Sequence record: PV764601.1
Reading direction: 5' to 3' (one strand)
Length of the DNA: 64,000 nucleotides
The notes beneath the pieces are model-generated. The model was not told the DNA's origin. It saw only the letters and a program-made list of their open reading frames with translations, and made no database searches. The position numbers and the translations under genes are program-made. Shown in pieces: positions 39,764-60,065 of this stretch (the first letter of the stretch is position 1; the number at the start of each line of letters is the position of its first letter).

Positions 39764-39999
39764 CTGTTCACCATAGTGAGTAGTGGCTGCACAGTTTCAG
39801 GAGTGGTACCGATGACGTGGAAGCCCACTACTTCGTGCCATCCCAAAGGCAGCTTAATGAATATCTTGCGGGTCAAGCGTAAATCTTCGTACACGGTTGC
39901 CCGTTTGAATGGATCAGTGTGTTGCAACACGTCTGCGGCCATGTCTTTGCACAGCCGCTCCATAGCGTCGTCCCCGACGTATTCAATGACCTTGCTCAT
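39760..39999 (-). CDS. Hypothetical protein
   Basis: Start MSKVI overlaps the dnaX stop. Confidence 0.6.
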   Translation of the reverse strand: MSKVIEYVGDDAMERLCKDMAADVLQHTDPFKRATVYEDLRLTRKIFIKLPLGWHEVVGFHVIGTTPETVQPLLTMVNR

Positions 40000-41246
40000 T
40001 ATCCCTTCTTGGAATCCACAACCCAGCCGATCAGGTGGGAGGTAATCATCATCCGCTCGACGCTGGCAATGCCGCCACTGATGCACTTCTGTCGGAGGTC
40101 GATCAGGGTACGCTGCAACGATGCGAGCATTTCAATCACCTTGCCCTTGCTGGGATCGAAGCCCTCGACCGAGTTCTTGATGACAGACGCGAAGCGCTTG
40201 TTGAGTGGGTTATGCCACACGTTCGGGTGGTAGCGCATGTTCTTGGTCAGTTCCGCATCCACGATGTACTGATTCAGCCAGATGCACTTGGACAGGAACG
40301 GCACCCAATCGGTACGCAGGTCGAGCATGTACTTGGCGACGCCAACACGATTGAGCCCGTAGCACGCAGTCAGCACCTTGATCGCTAGGTCGTCCAAACC
40401 TTCCTGACCACCAGCTTGTGCGTTGTTGCTCAAGATGGCCTTGAGTTCGTCGGCACTGAGCTTCGGGTTGTTAGCCAGCTGCATCTGCACAGCTTCCAGC
40501 AACTGCACGCTGTCACGCATGTAACCCTGCGACAGGTTGGCCAGATGCTCGATCACCTCATCCCCGACCTTGATGTTCTCCTTCCCTGCGATGAACTTGA
40601 TGCGCTTGATTACGTCCGCCGTCGGCACCAGCTGGATGTTCATCGGCACACAGCGATTGCGCATCGTCTGCTTGAGCATCTGCGGATCGGTGGTGCTCAG
40701 GATATACAGCGTCTGTTCCGGTGGCTTCTCCAGAGGCACCAGCAGGGCCTCAGCAGCCTGTGGTGTAAGCTGGTGCACTTCGTCCAGATGCAGGATGCGA
40801 AGGTTACCGAGGCGCGGACGGTTCTTGCTGCGCTGGATGATCGCGCGCACGTCGTCGATGCCACGCTTCTCCGAAGCATTCACCTGCTCGTAGTCAGGAT
40901 GGGACTCAATCGGCATCAGGCAGTTCTGACACTTGCCACATGCGTTCATGGTTTCGCAGTTGACGTACCGAGCGATCATCTGGCTAACAGTGGTCTTGCC
41001 ACAGCCAGTGGGACCGACCAGCAGGATCGCGCCCGGAATCTTCTTGGTCTTCAACATGCCCCTGAACTTGTTGATGATCTCCGTCTGACCAACGAGGTCA
41101 TCAATGTCCTTCGGACGCCAGCGCACAGCGAGGCTGCGATTGTCCACCGTATCGCTTACGGGTACTGCAACCTCCGTAGACTTGGACTTCTTCTTGACCT
41201 TCCCATCCTTGTTCTTGGACTTCTTCTTACTCTTCGTGTCGCTCAC
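39999..41246 (-). CDS. dnaX: DNA polymerase III gamma/tau-like clamp-loader ATPase
   Basis: LAVRWRPK, GPTGCGKTT, Zn CxxC, LDEVHQL, EKPP, RNRC, GYMRD; GTG start at 41246 with GGAGA RBS. Confidence 0.92.
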   Translation of the reverse strand: MSDTKSKKKSKNKDGKVKKKSKSTEVAVPVSDTVDNRSLAVRWRPKDIDDLVGQTEIINKFRGMLKTKKIPGAILLVGPTGCGKTTVSQMIARYVNCETMNACGKCQNCLMPIESHPDYEQVNASEKRGIDDVRAIIQRSKNRPRLGNLRILHLDEVHQLTPQAAEALLVPLEKPPEQTLYILSTTDPQMLKQTMRNRCVPMNIQLVPTADVIKRIKFIAGKENIKVGDEVIEHLANLSQGYMRDSVQLLEAVQMQLANNPKLSADELKAILSNNAQAGGQEGLDDLAIKVLTACYGLNRVGVAKYMLDLRTDWVPFLSKCIWLNQYIVDAELTKNMRYHPNVWHNPLNKRFASVIKNSVEGFDPSKGKVIEMLASLQRTLIDLRQKCISGGIASVERMMITSHLIGWVVDSKKG

Positions 41247-41280
41247 TTCGGGTTCTCCAATGGAGGCATCTGCCACTGAT

Positions 41281-41290
41281 TATTTACAGG
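41281..41290 (-). promoter_or_regulatory. Putative phage promoter CCTGTAAATA upstream of dnaX
   Basis: Exact motif following a terminator-like hairpin. Confidence 0.65.
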
Positions 41291-41302
41291 ATTCCGAATA
41301 CG

Positions 41303-41334
41303 AAAAAGGCCCCATCCCGCTAGGGAATGGAGCC
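41303..41334 (-). terminator. Probable intrinsic terminator
   Basis: Imperfect hairpin followed by TTTTT on the minus strand. Confidence 0.5.
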
Positions 41335-41340
41335 TCGGTT

Positions 41341-41652: not shown

Positions 41653-41891
41653 TGATAGTTCCTCATGTATGCGATGATGGCGTGTAGGCTACGCGGGTCA
41701 GTGATGTTAGTGATGGCATACGATTTGCCATCCACTTCCACACAGCGATTGTCGATAGTGCCGGGAGGTAATGCTTGGTCAATGAACCAGTCCGGCAGCT
41801 TCGACTGATCTTCTGCCCACTCTACCCGAACAGACCCTTCGGTCTGTTCTTGATTTCCTTCACCCTCTTGGCTGCTGCATTCAGTTCCCAT
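41649..41891 (-). CDS. Hypothetical protein (start probably near 41820)
   Basis: Coupled ORF. Confidence 0.5.
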   Translation of the reverse strand: MGTECSSQEGEGNQEQTEGSVRVEWAEDQSKLPDWFIDQALPPGTIDNRCVEVDGKSYAITNITDPRSLHAIIAYMRNYQ

Positions 41892-43038: not shown

Positions 43039-43048
43039 TGTTCGTTCC

Positions 43049-43627
43049 TTACAGGCTGATACGATGGGTGAGACTGTAGACTTCACCGCGCAGTTTGCGG
43101 ATGTTGTTCAGCAGTCGGATCAGGGTGCGGTTGTTGGACGCAACGTTATCCGGCGTCTCAGCGAATTCAGTCGGAATACCCAGCACGTCAGTGTTGAGCA
43201 CAGGATAGAGCATGTCCTCCGTATGACTCAGAGCGCCAGTCAGTTGATTGAACTCCGATTCCACGTAGGTCAGCAGGCTGCCCACACTGTACACCGAGAG
43301 TTCACAGCAATCAGCTGCATCATCGCTCAGGAGGTTGGTGACGCTGCGCTCTGCCTGCTTCACCGGATCCGACGACTTCCACACCCTCGGGGACTCGCTG
43401 ATAGACACCGCGTTGCTTTCCACTTCGGCCGCAGCAGGTTCGTCGCCATCTGCCACCAGCACCGCACGCTGGAGCAGTTCCAGCTGGTCATGGGTCAGCG
43501 GGGTGTCACCGTTGATGATGCCGTTGATGAACTTGTCCGTCAGGGTCAAGGTCTTGGCAGGCTTGGCAGGCTTCACTACCTTCTTTGCCTTCGGTGCAGC
43601 CGACTTCTTCTTGCGCGGAGTAGCCAT
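43049..43627 (-). CDS. Hypothetical protein with Lys/Ala/Pro-rich N-terminus
   Basis: MATPRKKKSAAPKAKKVVKPAKPAK. Confidence 0.75.
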   Translation of the reverse strand: MATPRKKKSAAPKAKKVVKPAKPAKTLTLTDKFINGIINGDTPLTHDQLELLQRAVLVADGDEPAAAEVESNAVSISESPRVWKSSDPVKQAERSVTNLLSDDAADCCELSVYSVGSLLTYVESEFNQLTGALSHTEDMLYPVLNTDVLGIPTEFAETPDNVASNNRTLIRLLNNIRKLRGEVYSLTHRISL

Positions 43628-44484
43628 TAGTTTTCCTCGTTATCAGTGGATACAGCAGTGGTGAAGTACAGACCTTCGATACCGATCAGATGGTTGTACT
43701 TGGTCGGGTCAAGATAGCCAGTGGTCACAACAGGAGTGCCATGCCACGTACCGCAGTAGCCGCGCCCGATCATGAGGCTGTACTGCTTTGCGGGCTGCCA
43801 ATCAGCAAGGAATTTCTCGTTGAGCAGCAGAGTCTTGAGGCCGTCAACCGAAGTGTAGAGAATCTTTTCGTGATCGTGGGCGTACTGAACCGCTTCGAGT
43901 GCTGCGTCACTTCCGGTCAGCGTGGTCGGCACCGGAATCAGTTCCTCCACCACAAGGTTGCGCGCGTCGAGGTCATCAATCTCTTCGACGCCAACGTCCA
44001 GCAGTTCGCGGTGCTCAGAGTTCAGACGCTCCCACACAACCTGCGGAATCTCGTTGCCATCAAAGTCAACGTGACGTTCCTTGACGTCGGACATGATCGG
44101 CAGCTTGACCTCGATAGCAGGACCGTGGAAGCGTTCGCCCGAGGGGTCGATGCTGACCACTGCACCATGCAGGCGCATCACACCCTCGCCGTCCTTGAAC
44201 AGTCGGCTCAGGCGACGGTGCTGGAAGCACGGGTATCCGCTGGGCTCTGACACGTCATGCCAATCCTCCGGTTTATCCTCAACGATGGGCGTCAGGATTT
44301 CGTAGCGGGCGACCCGGCTAAATAGGTCGATTACAACCTCTGCACTTGCGCCGCTGTGGCCTTGCGCAGAGAAGGTGTCGATCAGCTGGAGCACGGCATC
44401 GCCAAGCATACCGCCGTAGTCACTCTCCGGGCTCAGTAGGCCCGCCAGTTCCAGTTCGCGTCGTGCGTGATTACTCAGTGACAT
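43627..44484 (-). CDS. Hypothetical phage protein
   Basis: ARRELEL...FSAQGHSGAS phage-type module. Confidence 0.75.
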   Translation of the reverse strand: MSLSNHARRELELAGLLSPESDYGGMLGDAVLQLIDTFSAQGHSGASAEVVIDLFSRVARYEILTPIVEDKPEDWHDVSEPSGYPCFQHRRLSRLFKDGEGVMRLHGAVVSIDPSGERFHGPAIEVKLPIMSDVKERHVDFDGNEIPQVVWERLNSEHRELLDVGVEEIDDLDARNLVVEELIPVPTTLTGSDAALEAVQYAHDHEKILYTSVDGLKTLLLNEKFLADWQPAKQYSLMIGRGYCGTWHGTPVVTTGYLDPTKYNHLIGIEGLYFTTAVSTDNEEN

Positions 44485-44748: not shown

Positions 44749-45792
44749 CTACACTCCGATAGTGGGAAGGATTTCAGATACGATGGCTTCGCCGCGCTTG
44801 CGCTGCGCCTTGTTGTGACCTCGGGTCTTCAATTCACCATGCAGGTTGTCAGTGATACCGAACTTGATTTCAGTGTCAGTGTCAGCCAGCAGGGTTTCAG
44901 CTTGCCTGTCCGTCTTGTAGGTCACCACGTTATTGACCACGTTCGGATGGCGCGCGCCTACGTCGTAGGGCAACTCCACTCCACGTTTCACCACAACCTT
45001 GTAGAGCTTGAGCGGGTCATCTGCGATCTTCTTCAAGTCGCTGACCTTTTCCACCTTGAGATTGTGCAGGGTGAAGCCGGGCTGCGTCTCGATGAACTCG
45101 CGCTCGATCTTGAGTTTACCCGAAGTCAATCGCTTCGCCCTAAGCACACCGAACCCCTTGGGCAATGACTCGCCAAAGTTAGTTTGGTAGGGCGTGCCTA
45201 CGAACCAGCTGTTACCCATCATCTGCTGCGTGTGCAGGTGGCCAATGACCCAGTGATCGCTACCCTCTTCGGGCGTACCGTGGTTGAGGTCCATACGCGT
45301 GCCGTTGTCACGAATAGCGCCCGGACGTTCAAGGTGTGCAAGATTGAGTGTCTCACCTCCCTTCCGATAAGGCATCGCCTTCTTCTCAGGGAAGGGAAGG
45401 AAGTTGATGGGGACACCACCGACCACTACCTGCTTCTTGACGCAATGGAATCGGATGGACTTGAACATGCCCATCTTGGCCATTTCCTCAAACTGCTGCA
45501 TGGAATGGTAGCCCTCGTACTCGGTGTCGTGGTTACCGAGAATCCAATCCTGCTCCAGCAGTCCGTCATACTTGTGCATGAACCGCAGGAGCCAAACGCG
45601 AGCCTCTTCCGAGAGACGTGGCTTATCCGCTACGTCGCCCATCTGATACCAATTCTTGATGCCGTGCTCAAGTGCGTAGTCGGCACTCTTGCACCACTCG
45701 TTGTACTGCAATTCAAGGGATCGTTCAGCACCGAACAGGTGTGCGAGTTTGTCGGCGTGAATGTCCCCCATGAATACTCCGGCGAAGCTCAC
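44749..45792 (-). CDS. SbcD/Mre11/gp47-like metallophosphoesterase nuclease
   Basis: GDIH, GDV.D, GNHD, GHLH, GTPYQ. Confidence 0.92.
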   Translation of the reverse strand: MSFAGVFMGDIHADKLAHLFGAERSLELQYNEWCKSADYALEHGIKNWYQMGDVADKPRLSEEARVWLLRFMHKYDGLLEQDWILGNHDTEYEGYHSMQQFEEMAKMGMFKSIRFHCVKKQVVVGGVPINFLPFPEKKAMPYRKGGETLNLAHLERPGAIRDNGTRMDLNHGTPEEGSDHWVIGHLHTQQMMGNSWFVGTPYQTNFGESLPKGFGVLRAKRLTSGKLKIEREFIETQPGFTLHNLKVEKVSDLKKIADDPLKLYKVVVKRGVELPYDVGARHPNVVNNVVTYKTDRQAETLLADTDTEIKFGITDNLHGELKTRGHNKAQRKRGEAIVSEILPTIGV

Positions 45793-46910
45793 TCTGCGTT
45801 ACCTTCCTTACGCTCCAGAACGACAGTGCACATAGCACGCTGAGGGTCTGTAGGCATGTACCGAACATGGAAGTGCATAGGGTCGCTAGGGTCGATGTAC
45901 CAACACGGCAGCTGCGTACAGCTGTTGAACTCTTCCAGCGTGTGACATTGAGTAGGCTCACCATTGTACCGGGTGACTCCCATTGCCGTCAGCATCTTGA
46001 TGATGGTATCGGAGACGTGCAGTGCTCGTTCCTTCTCGGTCGGCGGAGGAACTACGCTGAGGCCGTTGTTGCCTTGGATGCTCAGTGTGCCATCTGCGAG
46101 GCCACGTTTCAGGTGCTCACTAAAGGCACCCGACACCAGCTGCGTCATGGTCAGGACGACAGGAGGGCGCGAGTACGTACCGATAGTGAACTCTACGCGA
46201 TCATCCAACACCAGCGCACGTGGGACCACGTCCGAGTTGTCAAAGGCAGTCTTGTTGTCGAAGATGTGAGCGAACGGAATACCCAGCACACCGAAAGCGT
46301 TCAACGCCAGAGCCGCTTGACTCAGGTTGGCGTTCTCGGGATTGGCCATGCACTCGAAGTAGGCGTCATGCAGCTTGGACCGGAAATTCAGTTCGTCGCG
46401 CACCTGCATCAGAATGAAGCCGTCATGATTGTCTCCCTTGTACGGACCATTCTTGCGGCGGGTGACTCCCCAATACCGATCGAGGAAACGATTGTGGAAG
46501 TAAATCTTGGCTTCGCCCGTGTCGATCAACTGCTGGGCCAGAGTGCTGCCATAGGGGAATTGCTGACGACGCATTTCCAGTCGCAGTCGCAGCTTCTTCC
46601 GAATCCACTGCCATGCCACCTTCTCTTCCCACGAGAACTTCTTGACTTCATGGGGATCATCAATCAGGAGGATCATTGCGTGACGTGCCCGATCGTTGGT
46701 CTTGCTCGCTTGGAAGGCGTGTAGCACCGAAGGGAACACTGTACCTGCATGCTCAATAGGCGCAGGGTAGGACTCAGACAGGAAGGCGTAGCGCCCGGTA
46801 AATGAATCAATGACGTTCTCAGCATTCGGCTTCAAGTGACCCTTGAGCGCAGCCAATTCCTCAAACGAATTCTTCTTGTGTTGCATGAGTTTCTCCGATA
46901 GCGAGTGCAT
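45789..46910 (-). CDS. NADAR (YbiA-like) domain fused to an unknown C-terminal domain
   Basis: FLSE.Y, HAFQASK, DRYWGV, N..G.ILMQVRDEL. Confidence 0.8.
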   Translation of the reverse strand: MHSLSEKLMQHKKNSFEELAALKGHLKPNAENVIDSFTGRYAFLSESYPAPIEHAGTVFPSVLHAFQASKTNDRARHAMILLIDDPHEVKKFSWEEKVAWQWIRKKLRLRLEMRRQQFPYGSTLAQQLIDTGEAKIYFHNRFLDRYWGVTRRKNGPYKGDNHDGFILMQVRDELNFRSKLHDAYFECMANPENANLSQAALALNAFGVLGIPFAHIFDNKTAFDNSDVVPRALVLDDRVEFTIGTYSRPPVVLTMTQLVSGAFSEHLKRGLADGTLSIQGNNGLSVVPPPTEKERALHVSDTIIKMLTAMGVTRYNGEPTQCHTLEEFNSCTQLPCWYIDPSDPMHFHVRYMPTDPQRAMCTVVLERKEGNAE

Positions 46911-46928: not shown

Positions 46929-47489
46929 CTAAGTACCCGACGCCTTCTCTTCCGCTTCTGTTAGGTATACTCGGCGTCGAACCGTGTTGCGTCTGCTGAA
47001 TTCCGCTGTACGATATGACAGGCGCATAGCAATGGAACGCCATACGTCATCGCCTAGATCGTACTCTTTAGTCCGCCTAACTGAGCGCAGCAACCCTGTC
47101 TTCATTGACAGGACCAATACGCCACAGCCTTCGGGAAACGGATACTTGTCCTTCATTTTCTTCCACACCGTTTCCGTGGTTACGATCCACAGACGATGGC
47201 AGTATCCACAATAGTTGTGCAGCTTCTTGTCAGCACGTAGATCGCTGACGCTGGACTTTATCTCGATTGCGGCGTACTTGCCTTTCAAGGTGTTGCAGAA
47301 TAGGTCCGCGCGGTAGTGGCCCTGTCCACCTCGCCGCGCCCTACCATTTAGACCAAACTCCCGATGGACGGCCCATCCTCTTTTGACCATGTGCCCGATG
47401 GCTGCACGGTACAGCTTCTCCCGCACAGTCACCCGACTGTTAGCTTTGACTACTGCCATGATAGATCGCAGAGTTTGCGCCGTGCTCAC
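46929..47489 (-). CDS. MmcB-like PD-(D/E)XK nuclease
   Basis: RADL...AIEIKSSVSDLRADKKL..Y..YC..LW. Confidence 0.8.
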   Translation of the reverse strand: MSTAQTLRSIMAVVKANSRVTVREKLYRAAIGHMVKRGWAVHREFGLNGRARRGGQGHYRADLFCNTLKGKYAAIEIKSSVSDLRADKKLHNYCGYCHRLWIVTTETVWKKMKDKYPFPEGCGVLVLSMKTGLLRSVRRTKEYDLGDDVWRSIAMRLSYRTAEFSRRNTVRRRVYLTEAEEKASGT

Positions 47490-47904: not shown

Positions 47905-48218
47905 TTCTCCATCAATTGAATGCGGTTTAGGTGTTTCAGGTCAGAGCCGGGAACCAATCGTGCCTTAGACTCACTCACCTTGGCGAATGCCTTGATGATC
48001 TTCGGTTCAAGCTGTCGGCGCAGGAACGCGCTTAGGCTTGTCGCGTTGATGGGGTCGAGCACGATAGTGTTCCCGATCTGTGAATAGAGGTACGTGACAG
48101 TGAGGTTCAGCGTCAGCACTTCTGCTTCGGACTTGTGCTTAGTGCTCACTGTGATGGACAGGCTACCGTCAGGCTGCCCGAACCTTCCACGCAGTTTGTC
48201 GATAGCCTGTTGCATCAT
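47901..48218 (-). CDS. Hypothetical protein
   Basis: Coupled ORF. Confidence 0.7.
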   Translation of the reverse strand: MMQQAIDKLRGRFGQPDGSLSITVSTKHKSEAEVLTLNLTVTYLYSQIGNTIVLDPINATSLSAFLRRQLEPKIIKAFAKVSESKARLVPGSDLKHLNRIQLMEK

Positions 48219-49687
48219 TATTCCTCGTCCTCCTGTTCCTCAGCGGCACCCGCCTTGGAATGCTGGTACATGAGTTCCTTAGCCTTGCCCGACTTGATCT
48301 GCTTGAGACAGAACGCCTTTATGTCGAACGGCTTGAGCTTCATCTTACGGAAGTGTTCCTTGCGCTCGGCGCCCTTGAGCAGGATCATCTTCTTGAGGTC
48401 AACCATGTTGGCCTTGAACTCTTGACCCTTGTTCAATTTGACCGAGAACTTCTTCTGGCTGCCGGACAACTGGCCCGTCATCTTGAGGAAGTACCACACG
48501 TCGAACGCGGGACAGAAGCCATGCGCGATACCGTCTTCGTCAGCCACCCAAATGCGAGCGAAGCACTCATGGCCCGGAACGGCCAGCTTGTTCTTCTTCG
48601 CAACCATGTGGATGTACCGATACTTGTCAGTACCTTCGCCAGTGATCGAAGTCTCTTCATGCACAGGACCGCTCGCACCACTCAGGCCGATCTGCGGGGT
48701 GCTAAGAGCACGCGGCGTTTGCCAGATACGAATGTCCGACTGGAAGCGCAGCGCCTGACCACCGGGTTCATAGCGAGGATCACCCTGCGCCATCGGCTTC
48801 TCACGAAGCTGGTTCACACCCATTAGGATCGCGTTCTTACGACGCAGCTTACCCTTGATCTTCGACAGGTTAGCGGCCAGCAGACGTGCAACCGCTGCGA
48901 GGCCCGCTGCCGGATCATCATCGTCCATGTTCTCAGGGACCAAGCTAACCCAGCTATCCAACACGATCACGCACTGCGGTGCGTTGTTCGGTGCCTGTAC
49001 GTAGAACTTGTTGTGCTTGGAGAAGAAACTCTTGTTGTACCGATCACCAACGATCCTACGGTTCTCCTTGGTGTTCTCGTACACGTAGTACCACTGCTGA
49101 TCCATCAACTCCATGTCCGGCAGACGACGCAGGATCATCGCCAGTGCATTGAGCAGTAGTTCACCGCGCTCTTCCGGGTAGTAGCGGATGCGAGGACGTA
49201 CAGCCCACGACCCGTCCTTGGCGCGCTGGCCAAAGATTTCCTCTACCGGAATTCGATTCTTCATCATGTTGCTCATGTAGACTGCATCGGTCGAACCCTC
49301 GGGGTCGGCAGACACAATCAGACCGGGCTGTTCTTCTTCCGGCAGGTCGAGCAAGGTGGCGAGGAAGTTAGAGCAGTTGGTGGACTTGGCAGACTGTTCA
49401 CCACCGACGTTCGTTACCATTGCACCATACACGTAGCCACCACCCAGCAGCATGTCCTGACAGAGCAGTCCCGAGTGCATGGCGTAGTCGAAACGATTCT
49501 GCATGTTGCTAGACAGCTTGGACTTCTTTTCCACGACCGTGATAACGTCGTCGTAGTTAGGACGCCAAACCTTTACCGCAGGTGCAGAAGCCTTGAGTTT
49601 AGCTGGGGCTTCCTTCTTCTTGGAGGCAGCCTTGGCCGCTCCCTTCTTTACCGATTTCTTTGCAGGCTTGACAGCCTTCTTTGCCAT
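48218..49687 (-). CDS. RecA/UvsX-like recombinase with H1-like basic N-tail
   Basis: GGEQSAKST Walker A variant, VLDS Walker B, NQLREK, PGGQALRFQSDIR; start moved to MAKKA. Confidence 0.88.
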   Translation of the reverse strand: MAKKAVKPAKKSVKKGAAKAASKKKEAPAKLKASAPAVKVWRPNYDDVITVVEKKSKLSSNMQNRFDYAMHSGLLCQDMLLGGGYVYGAMVTNVGGEQSAKSTNCSNFLATLLDLPEEEQPGLIVSADPEGSTDAVYMSNMMKNRIPVEEIFGQRAKDGSWAVRPRIRYYPEERGELLLNALAMILRRLPDMELMDQQWYYVYENTKENRRIVGDRYNKSFFSKHNKFYVQAPNNAPQCVIVLDSWVSLVPENMDDDDPAAGLAAVARLLAANLSKIKGKLRRKNAILMGVNQLREKPMAQGDPRYEPGGQALRFQSDIRIWQTPRALSTPQIGLSGASGPVHEETSITGEGTDKYRYIHMVAKKNKLAVPGHECFARIWVADEDGIAHGFCPAFDVWYFLKMTGQLSGSQKKFSVKLNKGQEFKANMVDLKKMILLKGAERKEHFRKMKLKPFDIKAFCLKQIKSGKAKELMYQHSKAGAAEEQEDEE

Positions 49688-49853: not shown

Positions 49854-51468
<1,615 letters not shown>

Positions 51469-51491: not shown

Positions 51492-52508
51492 TTATTGTTT
51501 ACAAGAATGTCGTTTGGCGTCGATGCGTACCACTTCATGCGGAAGCAGCAGTTCCTCAATGCCCAACTCTTGGCGCGCAAAACCATCCGGGTCAGCAATC
51601 TTTGCCAGCAGGCGTACCCGCTGTGCCCGATCTTCCTCGGTGAGTTTCTCAAACTCATCTGTGCTATCCGGTTGGTTGAACACTTCCTCAGTCTCAAAGT
51701 CCGAAGAAATATTCACCAGTTGTAGATCGCCCCTAGCCACAGCCCGCTTTGCATGCGGAGACAGGGAGTATGCGATCCCGTACTCATGAGACTGTGTAGG
51801 CGAATGCTTGGCATTCGTGATCCAGTTCTGAGTATAAGGAGCGAGCGTTCCCTTATCGGGGTTCATCTTGTTCACCGCTTTGTTCACCGCCAGCACAAAG
51901 TTTTGCGTTACGTCTTCAAGGTCAGTGCGTGGATTCTCCCGGTTGAACTTCACCGCTTGCATCATGGCGTGCCGCATGAACCGTTCAAGAATCTGATTCC
52001 TGAATTTGGTAGCTTCGGTTTCCCATGACTTGACGCGTTGAAGCACGCGACCTAGGTTCTTACCCGCACCGACTAGCTGCTCAATTCTCTCCATAGCTAT
52101 CCGACGCGACGGCAGGCGCTTCTGAGCGTAAAGCACCTCCAATTTCGGATAGTCCTTGGCCAACGTGCAGAAGCGCTTGATGATGAAGAAGAGGATGTTT
52201 CTCTCCAGCTTCATTCGGCGCACCAAGCGCACCTTATCCTGAGCCTTGTCGGCCAACAAGTACAGGTTCATGAGGTGCAGAACCTTGGGCTTGTCAACCG
52301 AACTAATCTTGCGTCCTGTGTTTGTTGCGTACCAGCAAAGCATCGCTGGCATGTTTCTATCAAAGAACTCCGTGTGCCTGATGATAGGCTCCACGGCCAG
52401 CATGAGAAGCTGGTCCAATGCAGTCATCATCTGACTATCATTCCAGCGTCCCTGCATCGTTTCCTTGACTGTCTTTGTAGCTTGGATAGATGCAGAGTTG
52501 CGACTCAT
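51492..52508 (-). CDS. Phage sigma-70-family factor (region 2 recognisable)
   Basis: EDVTQNFVLAVNKAVNKMNPDKGTLAPYTQNWI resembles region 2.2-2.4. Confidence 0.75.
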   Translation of the reverse strand: MSRNSASIQATKTVKETMQGRWNDSQMMTALDQLLMLAVEPIIRHTEFFDRNMPAMLCWYATNTGRKISSVDKPKVLHLMNLYLLADKAQDKVRLVRRMKLERNILFFIIKRFCTLAKDYPKLEVLYAQKRLPSRRIAMERIEQLVGAGKNLGRVLQRVKSWETEATKFRNQILERFMRHAMMQAVKFNRENPRTDLEDVTQNFVLAVNKAVNKMNPDKGTLAPYTQNWITNAKHSPTQSHEYGIAYSLSPHAKRAVARGDLQLVNISSDFETEEVFNQPDSTDEFEKLTEEDRAQRVRLLAKIADPDGFARQELGIEELLLPHEVVRIDAKRHSCKQ

Positions 52509-52909
52509 AGCTTCTTGGATCGTATTGCTAAGGCGATGCGCAGAGTGTGGTGGCAGAGCATCATGACTCCGCCCGGATTGCGAATGTTAGGCATGCTGCC
52601 GTCAGAGTACCGAATGCTACTGGCACCCTGCTTAGTCAGCAGCACTTCCTGTCCGTAGAAGACTTGGAATCCGCAGTCACACCACACCTTTACGTAGCCC
52701 TCACCGAGTAGAGTGTCAGGCTCTACGCACTGAATCTCTACCCGATGCTTGTCATGCGCGCCCTTGTCGCTGACGCGCTGTACTACGGCTCTGATGGTGC
52801 GAAGGCCCGAACGGCTCAGTCCGGCGCTGGCATTCAAGATGCGAGTCTCTCGTGCCTTCTCGTACTGAACCTTCGGGCAAAGCGCCATCAAGTCTGTGAT
52901 GGTCTTCAC
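52505..52909 (-). CDS. SWIM-like Zn-finger protein
   Basis: WCDC...LCHH. Confidence 0.65.
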   Translation of the reverse strand: MKTITDLMALCPKVQYEKARETRILNASAGLSRSGLRTIRAVVQRVSDKGAHDKHRVEIQCVEPDTLLGEGYVKVWCDCGFQVFYGQEVLLTKQGASSIRYSDGSMPNIRNPGGVMMLCHHTLRIALAIRSKKL

Positions 52910-54618
52910 TTCTTTTTCTTCTTGACCTTCTGCTTACCGGGGCGTTTGCTTCGAGTCACACCCATCGCCTTGTTACCGATCTTGGTCGCGCTGGCGATGT
53001 TCTTCTTCTTGCGGCCTGCCTTGTCCAACTTGACAGGTTCGACAACCTCGGGCTCAGGAGCCGCGCCTTCCTCAGCTTCCAGCTTCACCTTCTTTTTCTT
53101 CGGTGGGGCAGGCTTGCGTTCAGGGGTAGAGGACAACTTGAGCCTACCAGCCTGGGCGTCTTCATACTTCTTGAGGATCGCCAAGTCTCGGGTGGGATCA
53201 GCCGTCTCTTCCATTTCGATGCCCGAGAACAGAGTCTTGGTAGCACCTGTGTCACTGTCCGTCTTCGGCAAGTAGAACGCGAATTCCTTTCGCGCATCAG
53301 CCAAGCCCGAGGTCTTGACCATATCAACAAAGTCCAACGTGTGGAAGAACTCTTGCAGCTGCTTGCGCTTGGCCTTGGAGTTACCGAACAAGGTGCGCAA
53401 AGCATCCTTTGCTTCGCCGACAGGCACACCCGCCACCCGATCGTACAGGGACTTCTGGAACATTTGGATCGAGAACAGATTGTGGTACACCAGCAGCAGC
53501 GTGATCGTGTTGCTATTGACCATGCTTAGAACGTCGGTGTACTTCACCACTGAGCAGATAGGGCAGGTGCAGTTGAGCAGCTGGTTGCCGCCCGGATGGT
53601 AGCCACCCGCGTCAGCGTAGAACAGCACTTCCGGCAGCGCTTCGGTGCCGTTGGGCTTGTAATACTTGCGCCCATTAGCTGCCTGTAGGTGCGAGCTACT
53701 ATCCGAGGTGATGAGGGGCGCAATGTCGCTACCACTCAAACGCATCAAGGGAATCGTCTGCGTGATGTTGGCGATACCCAGCGCGTGATAGTGCTTGTAT
53801 CGCTGCCCACCTGTCATGATGGCGCACAGGCGGTCGATACTCGACAGGATGGAACCGAAGTAGATACCACCGACTGCAAGGCGATCAATGTCAGGGCGTT
53901 CAACGATCTTGCGGAAGGTGTCCATTTCCTTGCCGACCGCACCGTGGATGATGTTCAGCAGTTCCAGACCCGGCCGCTTGTTGTCCATCATGATGCGTGT
54001 GTTCTCAGCCTGCACCTTGGCGGACCGAGTGTAGATTTCAAGGCCGTTGGACGCCAGCGGCGTATCCAGCACCATGCCCCAATCCACATTGTCGTTGTAC
54101 CACGTGACCAGTTCCTTCGGGTCGATGTAGTCCACCGTACCCTTGACCAACTGGAAGCCACCGGAGTCTGCGATGATCTTGGTATGCTGGTCGATCCCGT
54201 AGCGGAAGTCCTTGCGACGGATGCCCGAAGAGCGTTTCTCCTTACCGATGTAGCTGGTGTAGTTCGTCATCACGCAACCATATTCAAGGTCGGCGGACGA
54301 ATGTTCCCAGAACGGCGAGAAGTTGTAGAACTCGTCGTAGGTGCCCTGCATGGGCCGGTAGATATGGGCACGCTGACCATTGGCTACGATCAGCAGTTCC
54401 CGGTCAGGACACTTGATACGCATGAAGTCGCTATCATGATCCACCACAGTTACGTGGCTCGGACCTCGACCATAGCGCACATAGATATGCACGCCTCCGC
54501 GCTTTGAATACTCACTTGCCGCAGGAACAAAGTTGTAGCTGGCTCCGCTTCGGAAGTCAGAGGCGGGAGTCCACCCTCCCCACGGTGCCCCTCCCGTTTT
54601 CTTCTTGCTCATTCTCAA
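52906..54618 (-). CDS. TGT/DpdA-family 7-deazaguanine transglycosylase
   Basis: DSGGFQ, MVLD, IHG, AVGG, HALG, SDSSS, CTCPIC...HN Zn site. Confidence 0.85.
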   Translation of the reverse strand: MRMSKKKTGGAPWGGWTPASDFRSGASYNFVPAASEYSKRGGVHIYVRYGRGPSHVTVVDHDSDFMRIKCPDRELLIVANGQRAHIYRPMQGTYDEFYNFSPFWEHSSADLEYGCVMTNYTSYIGKEKRSSGIRRKDFRYGIDQHTKIIADSGGFQLVKGTVDYIDPKELVTWYNDNVDWGMVLDTPLASNGLEIYTRSAKVQAENTRIMMDNKRPGLELLNIIHGAVGKEMDTFRKIVERPDIDRLAVGGIYFGSILSSIDRLCAIMTGGQRYKHYHALGIANITQTIPLMRLSGSDIAPLITSDSSSHLQAANGRKYYKPNGTEALPEVLFYADAGGYHPGGNQLLNCTCPICSVVKYTDVLSMVNSNTITLLLVYHNLFSIQMFQKSLYDRVAGVPVGEAKDALRTLFGNSKAKRKQLQEFFHTLDFVDMVKTSGLADARKEFAFYLPKTDSDTGATKTLFSGIEMEETADPTRDLAILKKYEDAQAGRLKLSSTPERKPAPPKKKKVKLEAEEGAAPEPEVVEPVKLDKAGRKKKNIASATKIGNKAMGVTRSKRPGKQKVKKKKK

Positions 54619-57790: not shown

Positions 57791-58074
57791 GGCGGCCCGC
57801 TCAACAAAGTTGTGTGGTCAGGGAAGGTCATCCTCGGGAGGATTTCCCGAGCACGCTCTACGTTCTGCTGATGACTGATACCGAGCCAGAAGTCAGGGGT
57901 GGTTCCCCAATATCGGGCGAAGGCAGCGGCCATCAAGGGGTCAATCATGCACCAGCCCTTCCCGATGTTGGCATGGATAGCCTGCTCGGGAATGCCAATG
58001 CGCTGTGCGAACTGAGACAGGGTGATTCCTGCCTCAGCCAGTCGGGTGTCCAGTTCAGTGAGAACTGCCGTCAT
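57760..58074 (-). CDS. HigA-like XRE HTH protein (orphan antitoxin-like)
   Basis: ITLSQFAQRIGIP...MAAAFARYWGTTPDFWLG. Confidence 0.75.
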   Translation of the reverse strand: MTAVLTELDTRLAEAGITLSQFAQRIGIPEQAIHANIGKGWCMIDPLMAAAFARYWGTTPDFWLGISHQQNVERAREILPRMTFPDHTTLLSGPPCDFVDIKIG

Positions 58075-59006
58075 ACCGCAACGTCCGCCTTGATTGCAGG
58101 GTGCGACTTGTAGCCGATGATTTCCACGTCATCAAACTTGTAATCCCACAGGTTGTCCCGAGCGGTCTTGATGTTGATGAAGGGATAGGGATACGGCTCG
58201 CGGGTCAGCTGCATCTTGGCCAGAGACAGATGATTCGAGTACAGGTGGAAGTCAGTCACCGACAGCACAAGCTCACCCGGCTGCACACCGATAGTCTTGG
58301 CGACCAACGCATTCAGCAGCGCATACTGTGCGATGTTGAAGGGCGTTCCGAGGAAGGCGTCATTCGACCTCATGAAGAAGTGGCAGTTCATTCGACCGTT
58401 GCGCACGATGAACTGGAACAGGATGTGGCACGGCTGCAACTTCATTTCCGGCAAGTCCTGCGGATTCCACGCGCTGATGACCAGTCGGCGGCTGTACGGG
58501 TTGCGCTTCATTTCTGCCAGCACTTCCGTGATTTGATCGACACCAGCGAAATCACGCCACTGCTTGCCGTACACAGGACCGAGGTCGCCATTCTCGTCTG
58601 CCCACTCATCCCAAATCGTGACCTTGTTGTCGGTAAGGTACTTGATGTTGGTCAGGCCCTTGAGCATCCAAATCAGTTCATGGAACACCGACTTGAAGTG
58701 CACCTTCTTCGTGGTGACCAGTGGGTACACCGGCAGGCTCTGACCGAAGTAAGGACTGCTACTGTCAAGCACCGTATGCGGGTGCATGTTGAATCGCATC
58801 TGATGGCAGAACTGCGACAGGGTGCCGGTGCCAGTACGATCAGGGACAGGATCACCGTGCCCGAAGATGCTAGCGAGGCCGCGCTCGTATTCGCCAAAGG
58901 GACTGCGAACGGCAACGCATTGATCGTATCGGAAGGTGTCACGTTCGTGACGAATCTGCTCCTCAATGGGAGCGAACCACTTGGGGTAGGTCAGGTCGAG
59001 AGTCAT
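58071..59006 (-). CDS. thyA: Thymidylate synthase
   Basis: DRTGTGT, TTKK, GPVYG.QWR, SRR, PCH, RSND..G.PFNIA. Confidence 0.97.
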   Translation of the reverse strand: MTLDLTYPKWFAPIEEQIRHERDTFRYDQCVAVRSPFGEYERGLASIFGHGDPVPDRTGTGTLSQFCHQMRFNMHPHTVLDSSSPYFGQSLPVYPLVTTKKVHFKSVFHELIWMLKGLTNIKYLTDNKVTIWDEWADENGDLGPVYGKQWRDFAGVDQITEVLAEMKRNPYSRRLVISAWNPQDLPEMKLQPCHILFQFIVRNGRMNCHFFMRSNDAFLGTPFNIAQYALLNALVAKTIGVQPGELVLSVTDFHLYSNHLSLAKMQLTREPYPYPFINIKTARDNLWDYKFDDVEIIGYKSHPAIKADVAV

Positions 59007-59263
59007 GGCTGGATTACGTTGATGGGAGTGTTGCCGACCAAGCAAGTACGATGGTCAGGGTCGTTTGCGTACAGAGGGTTGCCACCCTGCTTCTTACACA
59101 GCTCCGAATACAGCTGGCTGTTGTGCTCGTTGAGTCGAGCCTCGTTCCGTTCCTTGATGAAGGTACCGTAAACGATGATTGCGACTAGGGCCAAGATCAA
59201 CACGACTAGAACCGGATTGTACGAGGGAGGGTCTTTCTGAGTATGGTGAGGGATCGTCATCAC
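59003..59263 (-). CDS. Small membrane protein
   Basis: TM helix plus a Cys pair. Confidence 0.7.
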   Translation of the reverse strand: MMTIPHHTQKDPPSYNPVLVVLILALVAIIVYGTFIKERNEARLNEHNSQLYSELCKKQGGNPLYANDPDHRTCLVGNTPINVIQP

Positions 59264-59463
59264 TATGCCTTTATGAGTCTGGACCCGTAGGGTAAGAGTT
59301 CGTCCATGCGTTGACTGGTAGAGCCTTCGCCAATCAAAGCTCCATTCTGCACTCGGAGGGGATCATGAAATTTCTTGCTGCGATCCATCGCTGCCCGCTG
59401 TTCAGGGGTTGGAGTGTACGGCCTGTTTCGGGCCAAGAACGGAGACAGTTCGGAATCGTTCAT
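59263..59463 (-). CDS. Hypothetical protein
   Basis: Coupled ORF. Confidence 0.6.
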   Translation of the reverse strand: MNDSELSPFLARNRPYTPTPEQRAAMDRSKKFHDPLRVQNGALIGEGSTSQRMDELLPYGSRLIKA

Positions 59464-60065
59464 GACTTTTTCTTACGCTTCTTCTTGGGAGTTGTGGTAG
59501 GTACGGCGTTAACCTTCGCGTCAATGTAATCGTGGTACTTGGCCCGGAAGGTCTTGACCATGAGGGGAGACTTGCGCTTGGCATTGGTCTTGCTAAGAGC
59601 GGCAAGAAACGGACTATCCTTGACCGCCAGCACAAGATCGGATTTACTCAGGACACGGCGGCGCGCAGATACGCTAGTGTTGAGTGTGTCCCGTGCTACA
59701 GGGGTGGGCAGAGTCCTACCATCGTCGCTGTCCACGTTGATGACCATGTAATCCAGCCCAAGGCGGCGTGCCATGATTTCGCAAGCACCTCGGTAGTAGT
59801 CGTGAGCCACCAACGTTACGTCGTTCTTGCGTGCAAGGCCGCTGACCTCAGCTTCGATGTCCGCCATTGCAGGATCGTACTCTATGCGTCCGGGCAGGAT
59901 CAGCACGCGCATCTTCGTGCTCAACTTGGCGTGCTTGGAGAACGGGTAGTGACGTGGTGCAGGGATCGTACACGGCCACGTACCCGGATACTTCTTGGCG
60001 TCCGTTGGAGTAATGTCTACTTCCGGCTTGGCTGGTTCAGGTTGTTTGGCCATCGGTGTACTCAA
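59460..60065 (-). CDS. Hypothetical alpha/beta protein (possible SLOG-like fold) with basic C-tail
   Basis: Weak pattern only. Confidence 0.6.
   Translation of the reverse strand: MSTPMAKQPEPAKPEVDITPTDAKKYPGTWPCTIPAPRHYPFSKHAKLSTKMRVLILPGRIEYDPAMADIEAEVSGLARKNDVTLVAHDYYRGACEIMARRLGLDYMVINVDSDDGRTLPTPVARDTLNTSVSARRRVLSKSDLVLAVKDSPFLAALSKTNAKRKSPLMVKTFRAKYHDYIDAKVNAVPTTTPKKKRKKKS

What the first reader, a model, noticed from the sequence alone, without database searches (positions are those of the whole stretch)
39999..60065. Lys-rich disordered tags on replication proteins plus a poly-Asp SSB: possible electrostatic replication compartment
Basic low-complexity tails are added to otherwise standard proteins: RecA-like (MAKKAVKPAKKSVKKGAAKAASKKK), DnaX (KSKKKSKNKDGKVKKKSKS), DpdA-like (PKKKKVK...KQKVKKKKK), 43049 (PRKKKSAAPKAKK) and 59460 (PKKKRKKKS). 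The SSB carries alternating poly-Asp and Lys blocks. Hypothesis: SSB-coated DNA forms a charge-patterned condensate that recruits Lys-tagged clients, giving a shell-less replication factory. No nuclear-shell gene is seen in this window.
Basis: inference. Interest (0 to 1): 0.7.

Follow-up and report, generated by a model that had tools for sequence, protein, structure and literature searches.

The report
Charge-block tails on phage replication proteins
A jumbo Xanthomonas phage has a T4-gp32-type DNA-binding protein with an extremely long poly-aspartate/lysine-block tail and puts lysine-only tails on many of its DNA enzymes; both are real and inherited from wider phage families, but nothing here shows that they build a replication compartment.

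Summary
The window is the last 64 kb of Xanthomonas phage PhiXhv-12, a 227.6-kb jumbo myovirus. Every quoted tail is present.

The "SSB" is a gp32-type protein: the model has pLDDT 90, hits RB69/T4 gp32, and keeps a His/Cys3 site. Its 213-residue tail has 125 Asp and 39 Lys, net charge -96, and a longest Asp run of 68.

These are family traits:
- 108 of 139 long-tailed SSB relatives alternate acidic and basic blocks.
- 76 of 119 RecA relatives have Lys-rich N-termini.
- 20 of 25 relatives of the TGT-fold (DpdA-like) enzyme have Lys-rich C-termini.

Across the genome, 10 of about 30 DNA-transaction proteins carry Lys-rich segments, against 7 of about 300 others (p = 1e-7).

The two traits separate in relatives. 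One has a short SSB tail with tagged RecA and DpdA. Five keep an acid/basic SSB tail (one of them short) but have an untagged RecA.

Best reading: the lysine tails are polyanion (DNA) tethers, and the SSB tail is an overgrown, microsatellite-driven gp32-style acidic domain. Electrostatic hand-off between them is plausible. A condensate compartment is untested. I rate this a new variant of a known kind.

The parts
49854..51468 (-). gp32-type single-stranded-DNA-binding protein, given as the whole gene. Core domain is 50674-51468 (residues 1-265). The acidic/basic block tail is 49854-50673. The reading frame is interrupted once near its 3' end inside the repeats.
   Evidence: phrog_15004 E=3.5e-64. 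AF2 model has pLDDT 90. Foldseek hits RB69 gp32 core 2a1k at E=4.9e-6 and T4 gp32 8gme at E=2.1e-4. His59/Cys77/Cys93/Cys96 are kept in 51-58 of 72 relatives. Tail composition is; repeats are; comparison with PhiXhv-15/16 is.
48218..49687 (-). RecA/UvsX-like recombinase, 489 aa. It has an N-terminal Lys tail (residues 3-25: 11 Lys, 0 Arg, 0 Asp/Glu) and an acidic C-terminal end.
   Evidence: PF00154 E=7.5e-13 and phrog_97 E=2.8e-33. Of 119 homologues, 76 have at least 5 Lys in 15 residues in the N-terminal extension, and 99 have an acidic C-terminus. Most homologues shown begin with Met-Ala followed closely by Lys residues, which supports the annotated start.
39999..41276 (-). Clamp-loader AAA+ subunit (DnaX-like N-terminal half) with a 47-residue N-terminal extension. 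The extension holds a Lys run at residues 15-32 (11 Lys).
   Evidence: PF13177 E=7.5e-29, TIGR02397 E=1.6e-57 (below the curated cut-off), phrog_5846 E=1e-63. The domain starts at residue 47-48. Orthologues in L012, L013, L017 and L018 lack the extension.
52906..54612 (-). tRNA-guanine-transglycosylase-fold enzyme (DpdA-like by genomic context), 568 aa, with a disordered Lys-rich C-terminal tail at residues 495-568 (21 Lys, 4 Arg, net +17).
   Evidence: Profile hits to archaeosine TGT 1iq8 at E=1.1e-9. AF2 model hits human, mouse and bacterial TGT from E=1.8e-11, with tail pLDDT below 50. Six homologues carry PF01702. Of 25 homologues, 20 have at least 5 Lys in 15 residues near the C-terminus. 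The QueD-like gene lies at 47440-47904.
43049..43627 (-). 192-aa protein of unknown family with an N-terminal Lys/Pro/Ala tail at residues 5-25 (9 Lys, 1 Arg).
   Evidence: Translation. No Pfam, PHROG or NCBIfam hit. The protein at the same syntenic position in L011 has a similar C-terminal end and also a basic N-terminus.
59460..60053 (-). 197-aa protein of unknown family that ends in a 7-residue basic run (6 Lys, 1 Arg).
   Evidence: Translation. No family hit. The tail is identical in PhiXhv-15 and PhiXhv-16.
51492..52508 (-). Phage sigma factor. It is untagged. It forms a conserved gene block with RecA and the SSB.
   Evidence: The PF04542 hit is weak, E=1.3e-3. The RecA-SSB-sigma order is kept in phiRSL1, BcepSauron, Motura and L011, and SSB-RecA adjacency is also kept in L012, L014, L017 and L018; a sigma-like gene lies next to the SSB in L018, and in L019 a 136-aa acidic protein lies between SSB and RecA.

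Best explanation
SHOWN. The SSB is a T4-gp32-type single-stranded-DNA-binding protein. It has an OB/zinc core, a basic and poorly ordered N-terminus, and a C-terminal acidic domain. That domain has grown to more than 200 residues of Asp runs separated by Lys/Gly/Pro blocks. The runs are encoded by hexa- and nona-nucleotide microsatellites. Their length differs between three almost identical sister phages. The extreme poly-Asp length is therefore an expansion of a family-wide trait, not a separate invention.

SHOWN. Lys-only tails sit outside the catalytic domains of many DNA enzymes of this phage. In RecA and the TGT-fold enzyme, the composition of the tail is conserved across relatives but its sequence is not.

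INFERRED. The Lys tails are non-specific polyanion tethers. They hold the enzymes on DNA, raising local concentration and processivity, as lysine repeats do in actinobacterial topoisomerase I.

INFERRED. As proposed for gp32, the SSB's acidic blocks probably fold back on its own DNA-binding surface. When displaced by ssDNA, they would offer a polyanionic surface that basic elements of partner proteins can bind.

INFERRED. On SSB-coated DNA, Lys-tailed enzymes would then be captured and passed between SSB tails and DNA by weak multivalent charge contacts. Whether this network becomes a separate liquid phase is open.
For: gp32 kinship:
- Model pLDDT is 90. Foldseek gives E=4.9e-6 to 2.1e-4 with probability 1.00 against RB69 and T4 gp32. 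The next hits are at E=0.07 or worse.
- His59/Cys77/Cys93/Cys96 are conserved.

Family-wide tails:
- There are 494 SSB cluster representatives at E<=1e-3.
- Of the best 153, 139 have tails of at least 40 aa. Median Asp+Glu is 0.40, median Lys+Arg is 0.22 and median net charge is -30.
- 108 have at least 2 acidic and at least 2 basic blocks.

Microsatellites and length polymorphism.

Lys tails:
- 17 proteins genome-wide carry a Lys-rich segment: 10 of about 30 DNA-transaction CDS against 7 of about 300 others (Fisher p=1e-7).
- None occurs among about 64 non-DNA CDS of the structural and lysis block.
- Lys:Arg is 7.6 in the tails and 1.13 elsewhere, in a 55% GC genome.
- RecA: 76 of 119. TGT-fold enzyme: 20 of 25, and all 25 are net positive over the last 70 residues.
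- The TGT-fold enzyme's tail is predicted to be disordered.
- Tags persist where the SSB tail is short (L011). That fits binding to DNA rather than only to the SSB.

Precedents:
- Lysine repeats stabilise the enzyme-DNA complex and give processivity in Streptomyces TopA (PMC5714199).
- The very acidic end of gp32 is proposed to occupy its own ssDNA site and binds the Dda helicase only weakly (PMC11551737).
Against: - No binding, localisation or expression data exist for any of these proteins.
- The Pfam gp32 model does not hit the SSB. TM-scores to gp32 are moderate, at 0.46-0.58.
- In T4, partner recruitment uses an amphipathic segment rather than the acidic end (PMC11551737). Charge-only recruitment is therefore not the established gp32 mechanism.
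- The window SSB, and the intact PhiXhv-15 copy, end in a basic block rather than an acidic or hydrophobic tip.
- Two tagged proteins have no known function.
- My classes 'DNA-transaction' and 'other' rest on GenBank product names plus my own re-annotations, and 76% of genes are hypothetical.
Confidence: 0.55

Rival explanations
1. SSB tails, Lys-tailed clients, other charge-block proteins and possibly polyamines coacervate on phage DNA. The result is a liquid, shell-less replication factory that concentrates phage enzymes and may exclude host factors.
For: - The SSB tail is more charge-segregated than its shuffles. The sequence charge decoration score is 142 against 166 +/- 4.7; for PhiXhv-15 it is 50 against 74 +/- 3.4.
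- The genome holds a whole set of charge-block proteins. One is a 468-aa protein with a +49 Lys/Ala/Thr N-terminal part and a -108 poly-Glu C-terminal part (record 150817-152223). Motura encodes a protein of the same build (Lys-rich N-terminus, poly-acidic C-terminus) about 1.6 kb from its acyl-carrier-protein gene, three genes away; in PhiXhv-12 the charge-block protein lies immediately beside that gene. Homology between the two proteins was not tested.
- A spermidine-synthase-like gene lies at 19856-20635.
- Acidic tracts plus Lys blocks are the IDR grammar of nucleolar condensate proteins (PMC11938373). Low-complexity hits of the tail to Utp5, MAK16 and nucleophosmin reflect the same composition.
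- E. coli SSB phase-separates (PMC7584906).
- No shell gene is annotated.
Against: - Net charge per residue of -0.45 argues against self-coacervation, so polycations would have to be supplied.
- SSB block tails and client tags show no co-distribution in 10 lineages.
- The tags are old family traits, also found where the SSB tail is short.
- There are no imaging or biophysical data for this phage group. Four literature searches found none.
Confidence: 0.2
2. The tails are mostly tolerated low-complexity expansions made by replication slippage, with little specific function. The extreme poly-Asp length in particular would be neutral drift.
For: - The Asp runs are hexa- and nona-nucleotide microsatellites (34 copies of one hexamer) plus a perfect longer tandem duplication.
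- Tail length differs among three sister phages whose other tagged proteins are identical or differ by at most 7 substitutions.
- The SSB frame is interrupted once in PhiXhv-12 and once in PhiXhv-16, yet both phages were isolated as plaque formers (PMC13340338).
- The longest acidic run here is 71 residues. The longest among 153 relatives is 45.
Against: - Composition is conserved across hundreds of divergent homologues in three protein families.
- There is a strong Lys-over-Arg bias in a GC-rich genome.
- Tags are enriched on DNA enzymes and absent from virion proteins.
- This rival explains the length of the Asp runs better than it explains why the tails exist.
Confidence: 0.12
3. The polyanionic SSB tail acts as a nucleic-acid mimic or sink. 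It would soak up host DNA-binding proteins, defence nucleases or polyamines rather than organise phage enzymes.
For: - The tail has a very high negative charge density: 125 Asp in 213 residues.
- The neighbourhood carries counter-defence genes: a Tad3 domain at 43627-44484 and a NADAR domain at 45789-46910.
- 23 of 153 relatives end in [IVL]PF, and Motura ends in the hexapeptide DDDIPF. From my own knowledge, this resembles the tip by which bacterial SSB binds host partner proteins.
Against: - From my own knowledge, known DNA-mimic proteins are folded.
- The tail is always fused to an ssDNA-binding core and is interleaved with Lys blocks.
- The PhiXhv tail lacks the hydrophobic tip.
Confidence: 0.08
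4. The Lys tails are sorting signals that direct proteins into a protein-bounded phage nucleus.
For: Only the superficial resemblance to eukaryotic nuclear-localisation signals, and the fact that this is a jumbo phage.
Against: - No shell, PhuZ-type tubulin or multisubunit phage RNA polymerase is annotated in the record. Instead a sigma factor sits beside the SSB, which implies use of host RNA polymerase.
- The relatives phiRSL1, BcepSauron and Motura belong to genera outside Chimalliviridae.
Confidence: 0.03

Closest known systems
[quoted passage not shown]
   Same: - Same core fold (Foldseek E=4.9e-6).
- A His/Cys3 site at nearly the same positions.
- A basic N-terminal segment.
- An acidic C-terminal domain thought to self-inhibit DNA binding and to take part in partner contacts (PMC11551737).
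   Different: - No sequence-level match to the Pfam gp32 model.
- By my recollection, the tail is about four times longer than that of gp32.
- It is built of near-pure Asp runs alternating with Lys blocks, and ends in a basic block.
- About a quarter of family members lack the Cys ligands.
Lysine-repeat C-terminal domains of actinobacterial topoisomerase I
   Same: Lys-rich low-complexity extensions lie outside the catalytic core of a DNA enzyme. Composition is conserved but sequence is not. They are shown to stabilise the enzyme-DNA complex and raise processivity (PMC5714199).
   Different: Here the tails are on many different enzymes of one phage: RecA, clamp loader, family-A polymerase, a topoisomerase A subunit and a TGT-fold enzyme. 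They occur at either terminus, are shorter, and are untested.
E. coli SSB disordered linker and acidic tip, with SSB phase separation
   Same: A disordered C-terminal tail mediates partner binding and higher-order SSB-SSB contacts, and condensates form in vitro (PMC7584906). 23 of 153 relatives of the phage SSB end in an [IVL]PF tip.
   Different: The fold differs: a gp32-type monomer rather than, from my own knowledge, the homotetrameric OB fold of bacterial SSB. From my own knowledge, the E. coli linker is Gly/Gln/Pro-rich rather than charge-blocked. The PhiXhv SSB has no such tip.
T7 gp2.5 acidic tail binding basic patches of the T7 polymerase and helicase (my own knowledge, not tested here)
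   Same: Electrostatic docking of an acidic SSB tail onto basic elements of replisome enzymes.
   Different: In T7 the basic elements are surface patches on folded domains, not disordered Lys tails. From my own knowledge, the T7 tail is short and ends in an aromatic residue.
Nucleolar IDR grammar (acidic tracts plus Lys blocks) and the histone H1 / prothymosin-alpha pair
   Same: The same compositional grammar drives complex coacervation and localisation of nucleolar proteins (PMC11938373). From my own knowledge, Lys-only tails paired with a polyacidic disordered partner resemble H1 and prothymosin-alpha.
   Different: These are eukaryotic systems with no homology to the phage proteins. The resemblance is compositional only, and the phage tail carries a far larger net negative charge.
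Chimallin-bounded phage nucleus of Chimalliviridae
   Same: It is a jumbo-phage strategy for concentrating replication proteins around phage DNA.
   Different: No shell, tubulin or phage RNA-polymerase genes are annotated here. This phage group carries a sigma factor and belongs to other genera.

Membership tests
gp32-type SSB | Core fold like T4/RB69 gp32 | tested here: met
   The AF2 model (pLDDT 90, pTM 0.84) hits 2a1k at E=4.9e-6 and 8gme at E=2.1e-4, with probability 1.00 and TM 0.46-0.58. The next unrelated hits are at E=0.07 or worse.
gp32-type SSB | Zinc site formed by one His and three Cys | tested here: met
   His59, Cys77, Cys93 and Cys96 are present. They are kept in 55, 58, 52 and 51 of 72 aligned relatives. 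Metal binding itself was not tested.
gp32-type SSB | Match to the curated sequence family | tested here: not met
   No Pfam or NCBIfam hit for the SSB. Sequence and profile searches of PDB gave only low-complexity hits. PHROG phrog_15004, annotated 'single strand DNA binding protein', matches at E=3.5e-64.
gp32-type SSB | Basic N-terminal cooperativity segment and acidic C-terminal domain | tested here: inconclusive
   Residues 1-30 are basic with low pLDDT (48-67). The C-terminal tail is strongly acidic. Only composition was tested, not function.
gp32-type SSB | Cooperative binding to single-stranded DNA | not testable with these tools
   This needs biochemical data.
Bacterial-type SSB C-terminal tip | Acidic tail ending in a hydrophobic [IVL]-Pro-Phe tip | tested here: not met
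   The window SSB and the intact PhiXhv-15 copy end in a Lys block. 23 of 153 relatives do end in [IVL]PF.
Condensate scaffold (charge-block IDR) | Disordered region with segregated blocks of opposite charge | tested here: met
   There are five acidic runs of 9-71 residues separated by Lys blocks. The sequence charge decoration score is about 5 SD below shuffles.
Condensate scaffold (charge-block IDR) | Near-neutral net charge allowing self-coacervation | tested here: not met
   Net charge is -96 over 213 residues, or -0.45 per residue. PhiXhv-15 gives -0.32.
Condensate scaffold (charge-block IDR) | Observed phase separation, or a dense zone in infected cells | not testable with these tools
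   No data exist. Literature searches found nothing for this phage group.
   In 10 lineages:
- 4 have both traits: PhiXhv, phiRSL1, BcepSauron, Motura.
- 5 have an acid/basic-block SSB tail (L019's is short) but a RecA N-terminus with at most 3 Lys in 15: L012, L014, L017, L018, L019.
- 1 has a short SSB tail with tagged RecA and DpdA: L011.
The sample is small and was chosen by RecA tail status.
Lysine-repeat DNA tethers | Lys-rich low-complexity extension outside the catalytic domain of DNA enzymes | tested here: met
   Enrichment is 10 of about 30 against 7 of about 300.
Lysine-repeat DNA tethers | Composition conserved among orthologues while sequence is not | tested here: met
   RecA: 76 of 119. 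TGT-fold enzyme: 20 of 25.
Lysine-repeat DNA tethers | The tail binds DNA and raises processivity | not testable with these tools
   This needs biochemical data. The precedent is PMC5714199.
TGT superfamily / DpdA | TIM-barrel TGT fold with a Cys3-His zinc subdomain | tested here: met
   Foldseek E=1.8e-11 to human TGT, with many bacterial and archaeal TGTs also hit. Profile search hits 1iq8 at E=1.1e-9. Cys348, Cys350, Cys353 and His377 are invariant in 24 sequences.
TGT superfamily / DpdA | Acts on DNA, next to 7-deazaguanine synthesis genes | tested here: inconclusive
   The QueD-like gene is in the window. GTP cyclohydrolase and a radical-SAM gene are annotated elsewhere in the record. No QueC was looked for. 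No solved DpdA appeared among the 50 fold matches listed. The substrate cannot be tested here.
Chimallin phage nucleus | Shell protein, PhuZ tubulin and multisubunit phage RNA polymerases | tested here: inconclusive
   None is annotated among 330 CDS, and relatives lie outside Chimalliviridae. However, 76% of CDS are hypothetical, and no tool finds a protein by name. The 572-aa unknown protein at 28441-30159 matches only a small PHROG of unknown function.

The most novel reading that the evidence does not exclude
PhiXhv-type and related RSL1-like jumbo phages organise replication and recombination in a shell-less electrostatic coacervate. Its components would be the gp32-type SSB's polyacidic/Lys-block tail, a second protein that is H1-like at one end and poly-Glu at the other, about 17 Lys-only tagged proteins and phage-made polyamines. 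This would be a bacterial-virus counterpart of nucleolus-type condensates, and an alternative to the chimallin nucleus.
Probability: 0.2. Interest if true: 0.85.

Novelty: new variant of a known kind. Interest (0 to 1): 0.55.

Why it matters
How jumbo phages without a protein nucleus organise replication is little studied. This analysis defines a large, apparently undescribed clade of gp32-type SSBs: 494 clusters at 50% identity, whose tails alternate acidic and basic blocks.

It also shows that Lys-only tails are a recurrent, selected feature of jumbo-phage RecA and TGT-fold enzymes. In this phage they extend to the family-A DNA polymerase, a topoisomerase subunit and the clamp loader.

That gives concrete, sequence-defined candidates for asking whether charge-driven assemblies act as viral factories in bacteria. 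The co-distribution result warns that the simple scaffold-client picture is not what the phyletic pattern shows.

If the tails turn out to be only DNA tethers, the finding is a tidy extension of known biology. It also corrects three annotations in the public record.

Tried and rejected
1. Pfam, NCBIfam and PDB sequence searches with the SSB gave nothing, or only low-complexity hits to acidic eukaryotic proteins. The fold search was needed instead.
2. The word-indexed homologue search found only 4 SSB relatives. The exhaustive representative search found 494.
3. A motif-based definition of the core end covered only 62 of 153 proteins. I replaced it with phmmer domain ends.
4. My greedy ORF picker chose spurious plus-strand ORFs. 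I used the minus-strand gene list and the GenBank table instead.
7. Sister phages PhiXhv-15 and PhiXhv-16 are too close to say anything about conservation of the Lys tails, which are identical.
8. Searches for papers on this SSB family, on phiRSL1 SSB, and on replication compartments of non-nucleus jumbo phages found nothing specific. The PhiXhv paper does not discuss these genes.
9. L013, L015 and L016 had no SSB next to RecA and were uninformative.
10. Likeness to chimallin could not be tested, because no comparator could be obtained without recalling a sequence or an accession.

Full report
SOURCE AND ANATOMY

The window is 100% identical to the last 64 kb of Xanthomonas phage PhiXhv-12 (PV764601.1). 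This is a 227,648-bp virulent jumbo myovirus from sewage that infects X. hortorum pv. vitians (PMC13340338). Window position equals record position minus 163,648.

All genes between 37 and 64 kb lie on the minus strand. The region is a replication, recombination and nucleotide module. In order along the window it contains:
- an SbcC-like ATPase
- a clamp-loader AAA+ subunit
- a 5'-3' exonuclease
- a Tad3-domain protein
- an SbcD-like protein
- a NADAR-domain protein
- an MmcB-like protein
- a QueD-like protein
- RecA
- the SSB
- a sigma factor
- a TGT-fold enzyme
- a peptidase
- a dNMP kinase
- a PD-(D/E)XK nuclease
- thymidylate synthase

- The RecA tail starts at the annotated ATG. Most homologues shown begin with Met-Ala followed closely by Lys residues, so the tail is translated.
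- The clamp-loader tail lies in a 47-residue extension ahead of the DnaX-like domain. The most plausible starts are codon 1, or codon 11 with a GGAG ribosome-binding site. Both include the Lys run.
- The five basic tails hold 29.9% Lys and 3.9% Arg. The rest of the region's proteins hold 7.4% and 6.5%.
- A run of at least 7 Lys in 15 residues is expected less than once in a proteome of this size.

WHAT THE SSB IS

Sequence libraries other than PHROGs do not recognise the SSB.
- An AlphaFold model of residues 1-265, built on 72 relatives, has pLDDT 90.
- The only significant PDB matches are the RB69 gp32 core and T4 gp32 in its Dda complex.
- His59, Cys77, Cys93 and Cys96 are kept in 51-58 of 72 relatives. 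From my own knowledge, this matches the His/Cys3 zinc site of gp32.
- The first 30 residues are basic and poorly ordered.

The domain plan is therefore that of gp32: a basic N-terminus, a zinc/OB core and an acidic C-terminus.

The tail in the uninterrupted frame is 213 residues long. It holds 125 Asp, 10 Glu, 39 Lys and no Arg, for a net charge of -96. It forms five acidic runs of 9 to 71 residues, separated by Lys/Gly/Pro/Ser blocks. The longest pure Asp run is 68 residues.

THE TAIL IS A FAMILY TRAIT TAKEN TO AN EXTREME

An exhaustive search found 494 cluster representatives of this SSB core at E<=1e-3. Among the best 153:
- 139 have tails of at least 40 residues, with a median of 155.
- Median Asp+Glu is 0.40, median Lys+Arg is 0.22 and median net charge is -30.
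- 108 have at least two acidic and two basic blocks.
- 23 end in [IVL]PF.

The cultured jumbo phages phiRSL1, BcepSauron and Motura show the same design, in the same RecA-SSB-sigma gene order. Motura's SSB ends in DDDIPF.

No relative has an acidic run longer than 45 residues, against 71 here.

At the DNA level the Asp runs are hexa- and nona-nucleotide microsatellites. Their length differs among PhiXhv-12, -15 and -16, whose other tagged proteins are identical or nearly so.

Break count for the SSB gene:
- PhiXhv-12: one frameshift near the 3' end, associated with a perfect tandem duplication inside the repeats. The GenBank record therefore splits the gene into three CDS.
- PhiXhv-16: one frameshift.
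- PhiXhv-15: none. That copy is 465 aa and ends in a Lys block.

I compared the pieces separately and joined nothing.

THE LYS TAGS ARE WIDER AND OLDER THAN THE FINDING SAYS

A six-frame scan of the whole record found Lys-rich segments in 17 proteins. Outside the window these include:
- the family-A DNA polymerase (C-terminus)
- a topoisomerase A subunit (N-terminus)
- two helicases and another topoisomerase (internal segments)
- six hypothetical proteins

One of the hypothetical proteins is a second charge-block protein with a +49 Lys/Ala/Thr N-terminal part and a -108 poly-Glu C-terminal part. It lies immediately beside the acyl-carrier-protein gene. Motura encodes a protein of the same build (Lys-rich N-terminus, poly-acidic C-terminus) about 1.6 kb and three genes away from its own acyl-carrier-protein gene; I did not test whether the two are homologous.

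By GenBank product names plus my own re-annotations, 10 of about 30 DNA-transaction CDS are tagged, against 7 of about 300 others (Fisher p=1e-7). None of about 64 non-DNA CDS in the structural and lysis block is tagged.

Among 119 RecA homologues, 76 have at least 5 Lys in 15 residues in the N-terminal extension. Some others use Arg instead. 99 have an acidic C-terminus.

Among 25 homologues of the TGT-fold enzyme, 20 have a Lys-rich C-terminus, and all are net positive over the last 70 residues. That enzyme's tail is predicted to be disordered.

TESTING THE SCAFFOLD-CLIENT IDEA WITH NATURAL VARIATION

If Lys tags existed in order to dock on long acidic SSB tails, the two traits should travel together. 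They do not, in the small sample I could afford.
- L011 is the closest relative outside the PhiXhv group, with 62% SSB identity and the same gene order. Its SSB has only one short basic block and one short acidic block. Its RecA and TGT-fold enzyme still carry long Lys tails.
- L012, L014, L017 and L018 have SSB tails of roughly 150-200 residues that alternate acidic and basic blocks. Their RecA N-termini have at most 3 Lys in any 15 residues; L014's is moderately basic in Arg and Lys. The clamp loaders seen in L012, L017 and L018 are untagged. L019 has a shorter SSB tail and an untagged RecA.
- Four lineages have both traits.

I chose the sample by RecA tail status and did not correct it for phylogeny, so it shows separability rather than the absence of any interaction.

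MECHANISM

Shown:
- the identities above
- the composition, conservation and distribution of the tails
- predicted disorder of one tail
- the microsatellite origin of the Asp runs

Inferred:
- The Lys tails bind polyanions non-specifically and so tether enzymes to DNA. The precedent is the lysine repeats of Streptomyces topoisomerase I (PMC5714199).
- The acidic blocks of the SSB behave like the acidic end of gp32. That end is proposed to occupy the protein's own ssDNA site and to contact Dda only weakly, while an amphipathic segment upstream does the specific recruiting (PMC11551737). A helix at residues 248-257 of the phage SSB, just before the tail, could play that second role.
- Because the tail is a strong net polyanion, it should not coacervate by itself. 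It could do so with polycations: the Lys tails, the H1-like protein, or polyamines from the phage's spermidine-synthase-like gene.

It resembles the nucleolar IDR grammar (PMC11938373) and E. coli SSB condensates (PMC7584906). It remains possible and untested.

COMPARISON AND VERDICT

This is a gp32-type SSB with a hypertrophied, block-charged acidic domain, set in a phage whose DNA enzymes carry Lys tethers. I rate it a new variant of a known kind.

I found no paper that describes this SSB clade or these tags.

The compartment hypothesis is the most novel reading that the evidence does not exclude. I give it about 0.2.

Noticed in passing
Outside the window: PV764601.1 150691-152223 (L005:691-2223, plus strand); Motura L008:2090-2977: A second charge-block protein. 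It has about 170 residues of Lys/Ala/Thr repeats (net +49), a small central domain, and then Lys blocks alternating with poly-Glu (net -108). It matches no family. It lies immediately beside the acyl-carrier-protein gene. Motura encodes a protein of the same build (Lys-rich N-terminus, poly-acidic C-terminus) about 1.6 kb and three genes from its acyl-carrier-protein gene; homology between the two was not tested.
   Followed up: partly
Outside the window: PV764601.1 12822-15890, 16007-16648, 22413-23213, 132476-133429, 138203-138976, 139726-140166, 147186-148700: More Lys-tagged proteins: the family-A DNA polymerase (C-terminus), a topoisomerase A subunit (N-terminus) and five hypothetical proteins. 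Two of the hypothetical proteins also carry long acidic blocks.
   Followed up: partly
window 49854-51468: The SSB's acidic runs are microsatellites whose length differs among three sister phages. The frame is interrupted once in PhiXhv-12 and once in PhiXhv-16, and is intact in PhiXhv-15. GenBank splits the PhiXhv-12 gene into three 'hypothetical' CDS. It is not known whether these are real alleles or assembly artefacts.
   Followed up: partly
window 39999-41276; 49854-51468; 52906-54612: Public annotation problems. The clamp-loader subunit is labelled 'chromosomal replication initiator protein DnaA'. The gp32-type SSB and the TGT-fold enzyme are labelled 'hypothetical protein'.
   Followed up: yes
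window 43627-44484: A 285-aa protein whose first 115 residues match Pfam Tad3, the type I Thoeris inhibitor (E=4.4e-27). Tad3-domain genes also lie near RecA in L011, L017 and L019.
   Followed up: no
window 45789-46910: A NADAR-domain protein (E=1e-13) with a 200-residue C-terminal extension. It may be a hydrolase that reverses ADP-ribosylation.
   Followed up: no
window 24575-25363: A 262-aa protein matching the ADP-ribosyltransferase exoenzyme family (Pfam E=2e-8), with weak PHROG hits to Alt/Mod-like RNA-polymerase ADP-ribosyltransferases. It is probably a host-takeover enzyme.
   Followed up: no
window 19856-20635: A spermine/spermidine-synthase-like gene (Pfam E=2.9e-5, just above the cut-off). 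Phage-made polyamines would be relevant to a genome that encodes so many polyacidic proteins.
   Followed up: no
Relatives: L008:19709-21223 (Motura SSB), P0003, and 23 of 153 family members: Many SSB relatives end in [IVL]-Pro-Phe after an acidic run; Motura ends in DDDIPF. From my own knowledge, this is the look of the host SSB tip that recruits bacterial repair and replication proteins. The PhiXhv SSBs lack it.
   Followed up: partly
L017:2705-3928: This SSB relative builds its tail from Ser/Glu acidic blocks and AT-hook-like basic blocks, rather than Asp and Lys blocks. The block pattern, not the residue type, is what is kept.
   Followed up: no
window 47440-47904 and 52906-54612, with PV764601.1 8706-9386 and 11391-12290: A QueD-like gene, a TGT-fold enzyme, a GTP cyclohydrolase and a radical-SAM gene together suggest a 7-deazaguanine DNA modification. 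I did not look for a QueC-like gene.
   Followed up: no
P0191-P0210 and similar RecA homologues of about 840 aa (Erwinia jumbo phages): A block of RecA homologues is nearly twice as long as the window's. P0168, P0223, P0250 and P0270 carry intein-splicing domains, and P0223, P0229, P0264 and P0270 carry the PF03161 domain.
   Followed up: no
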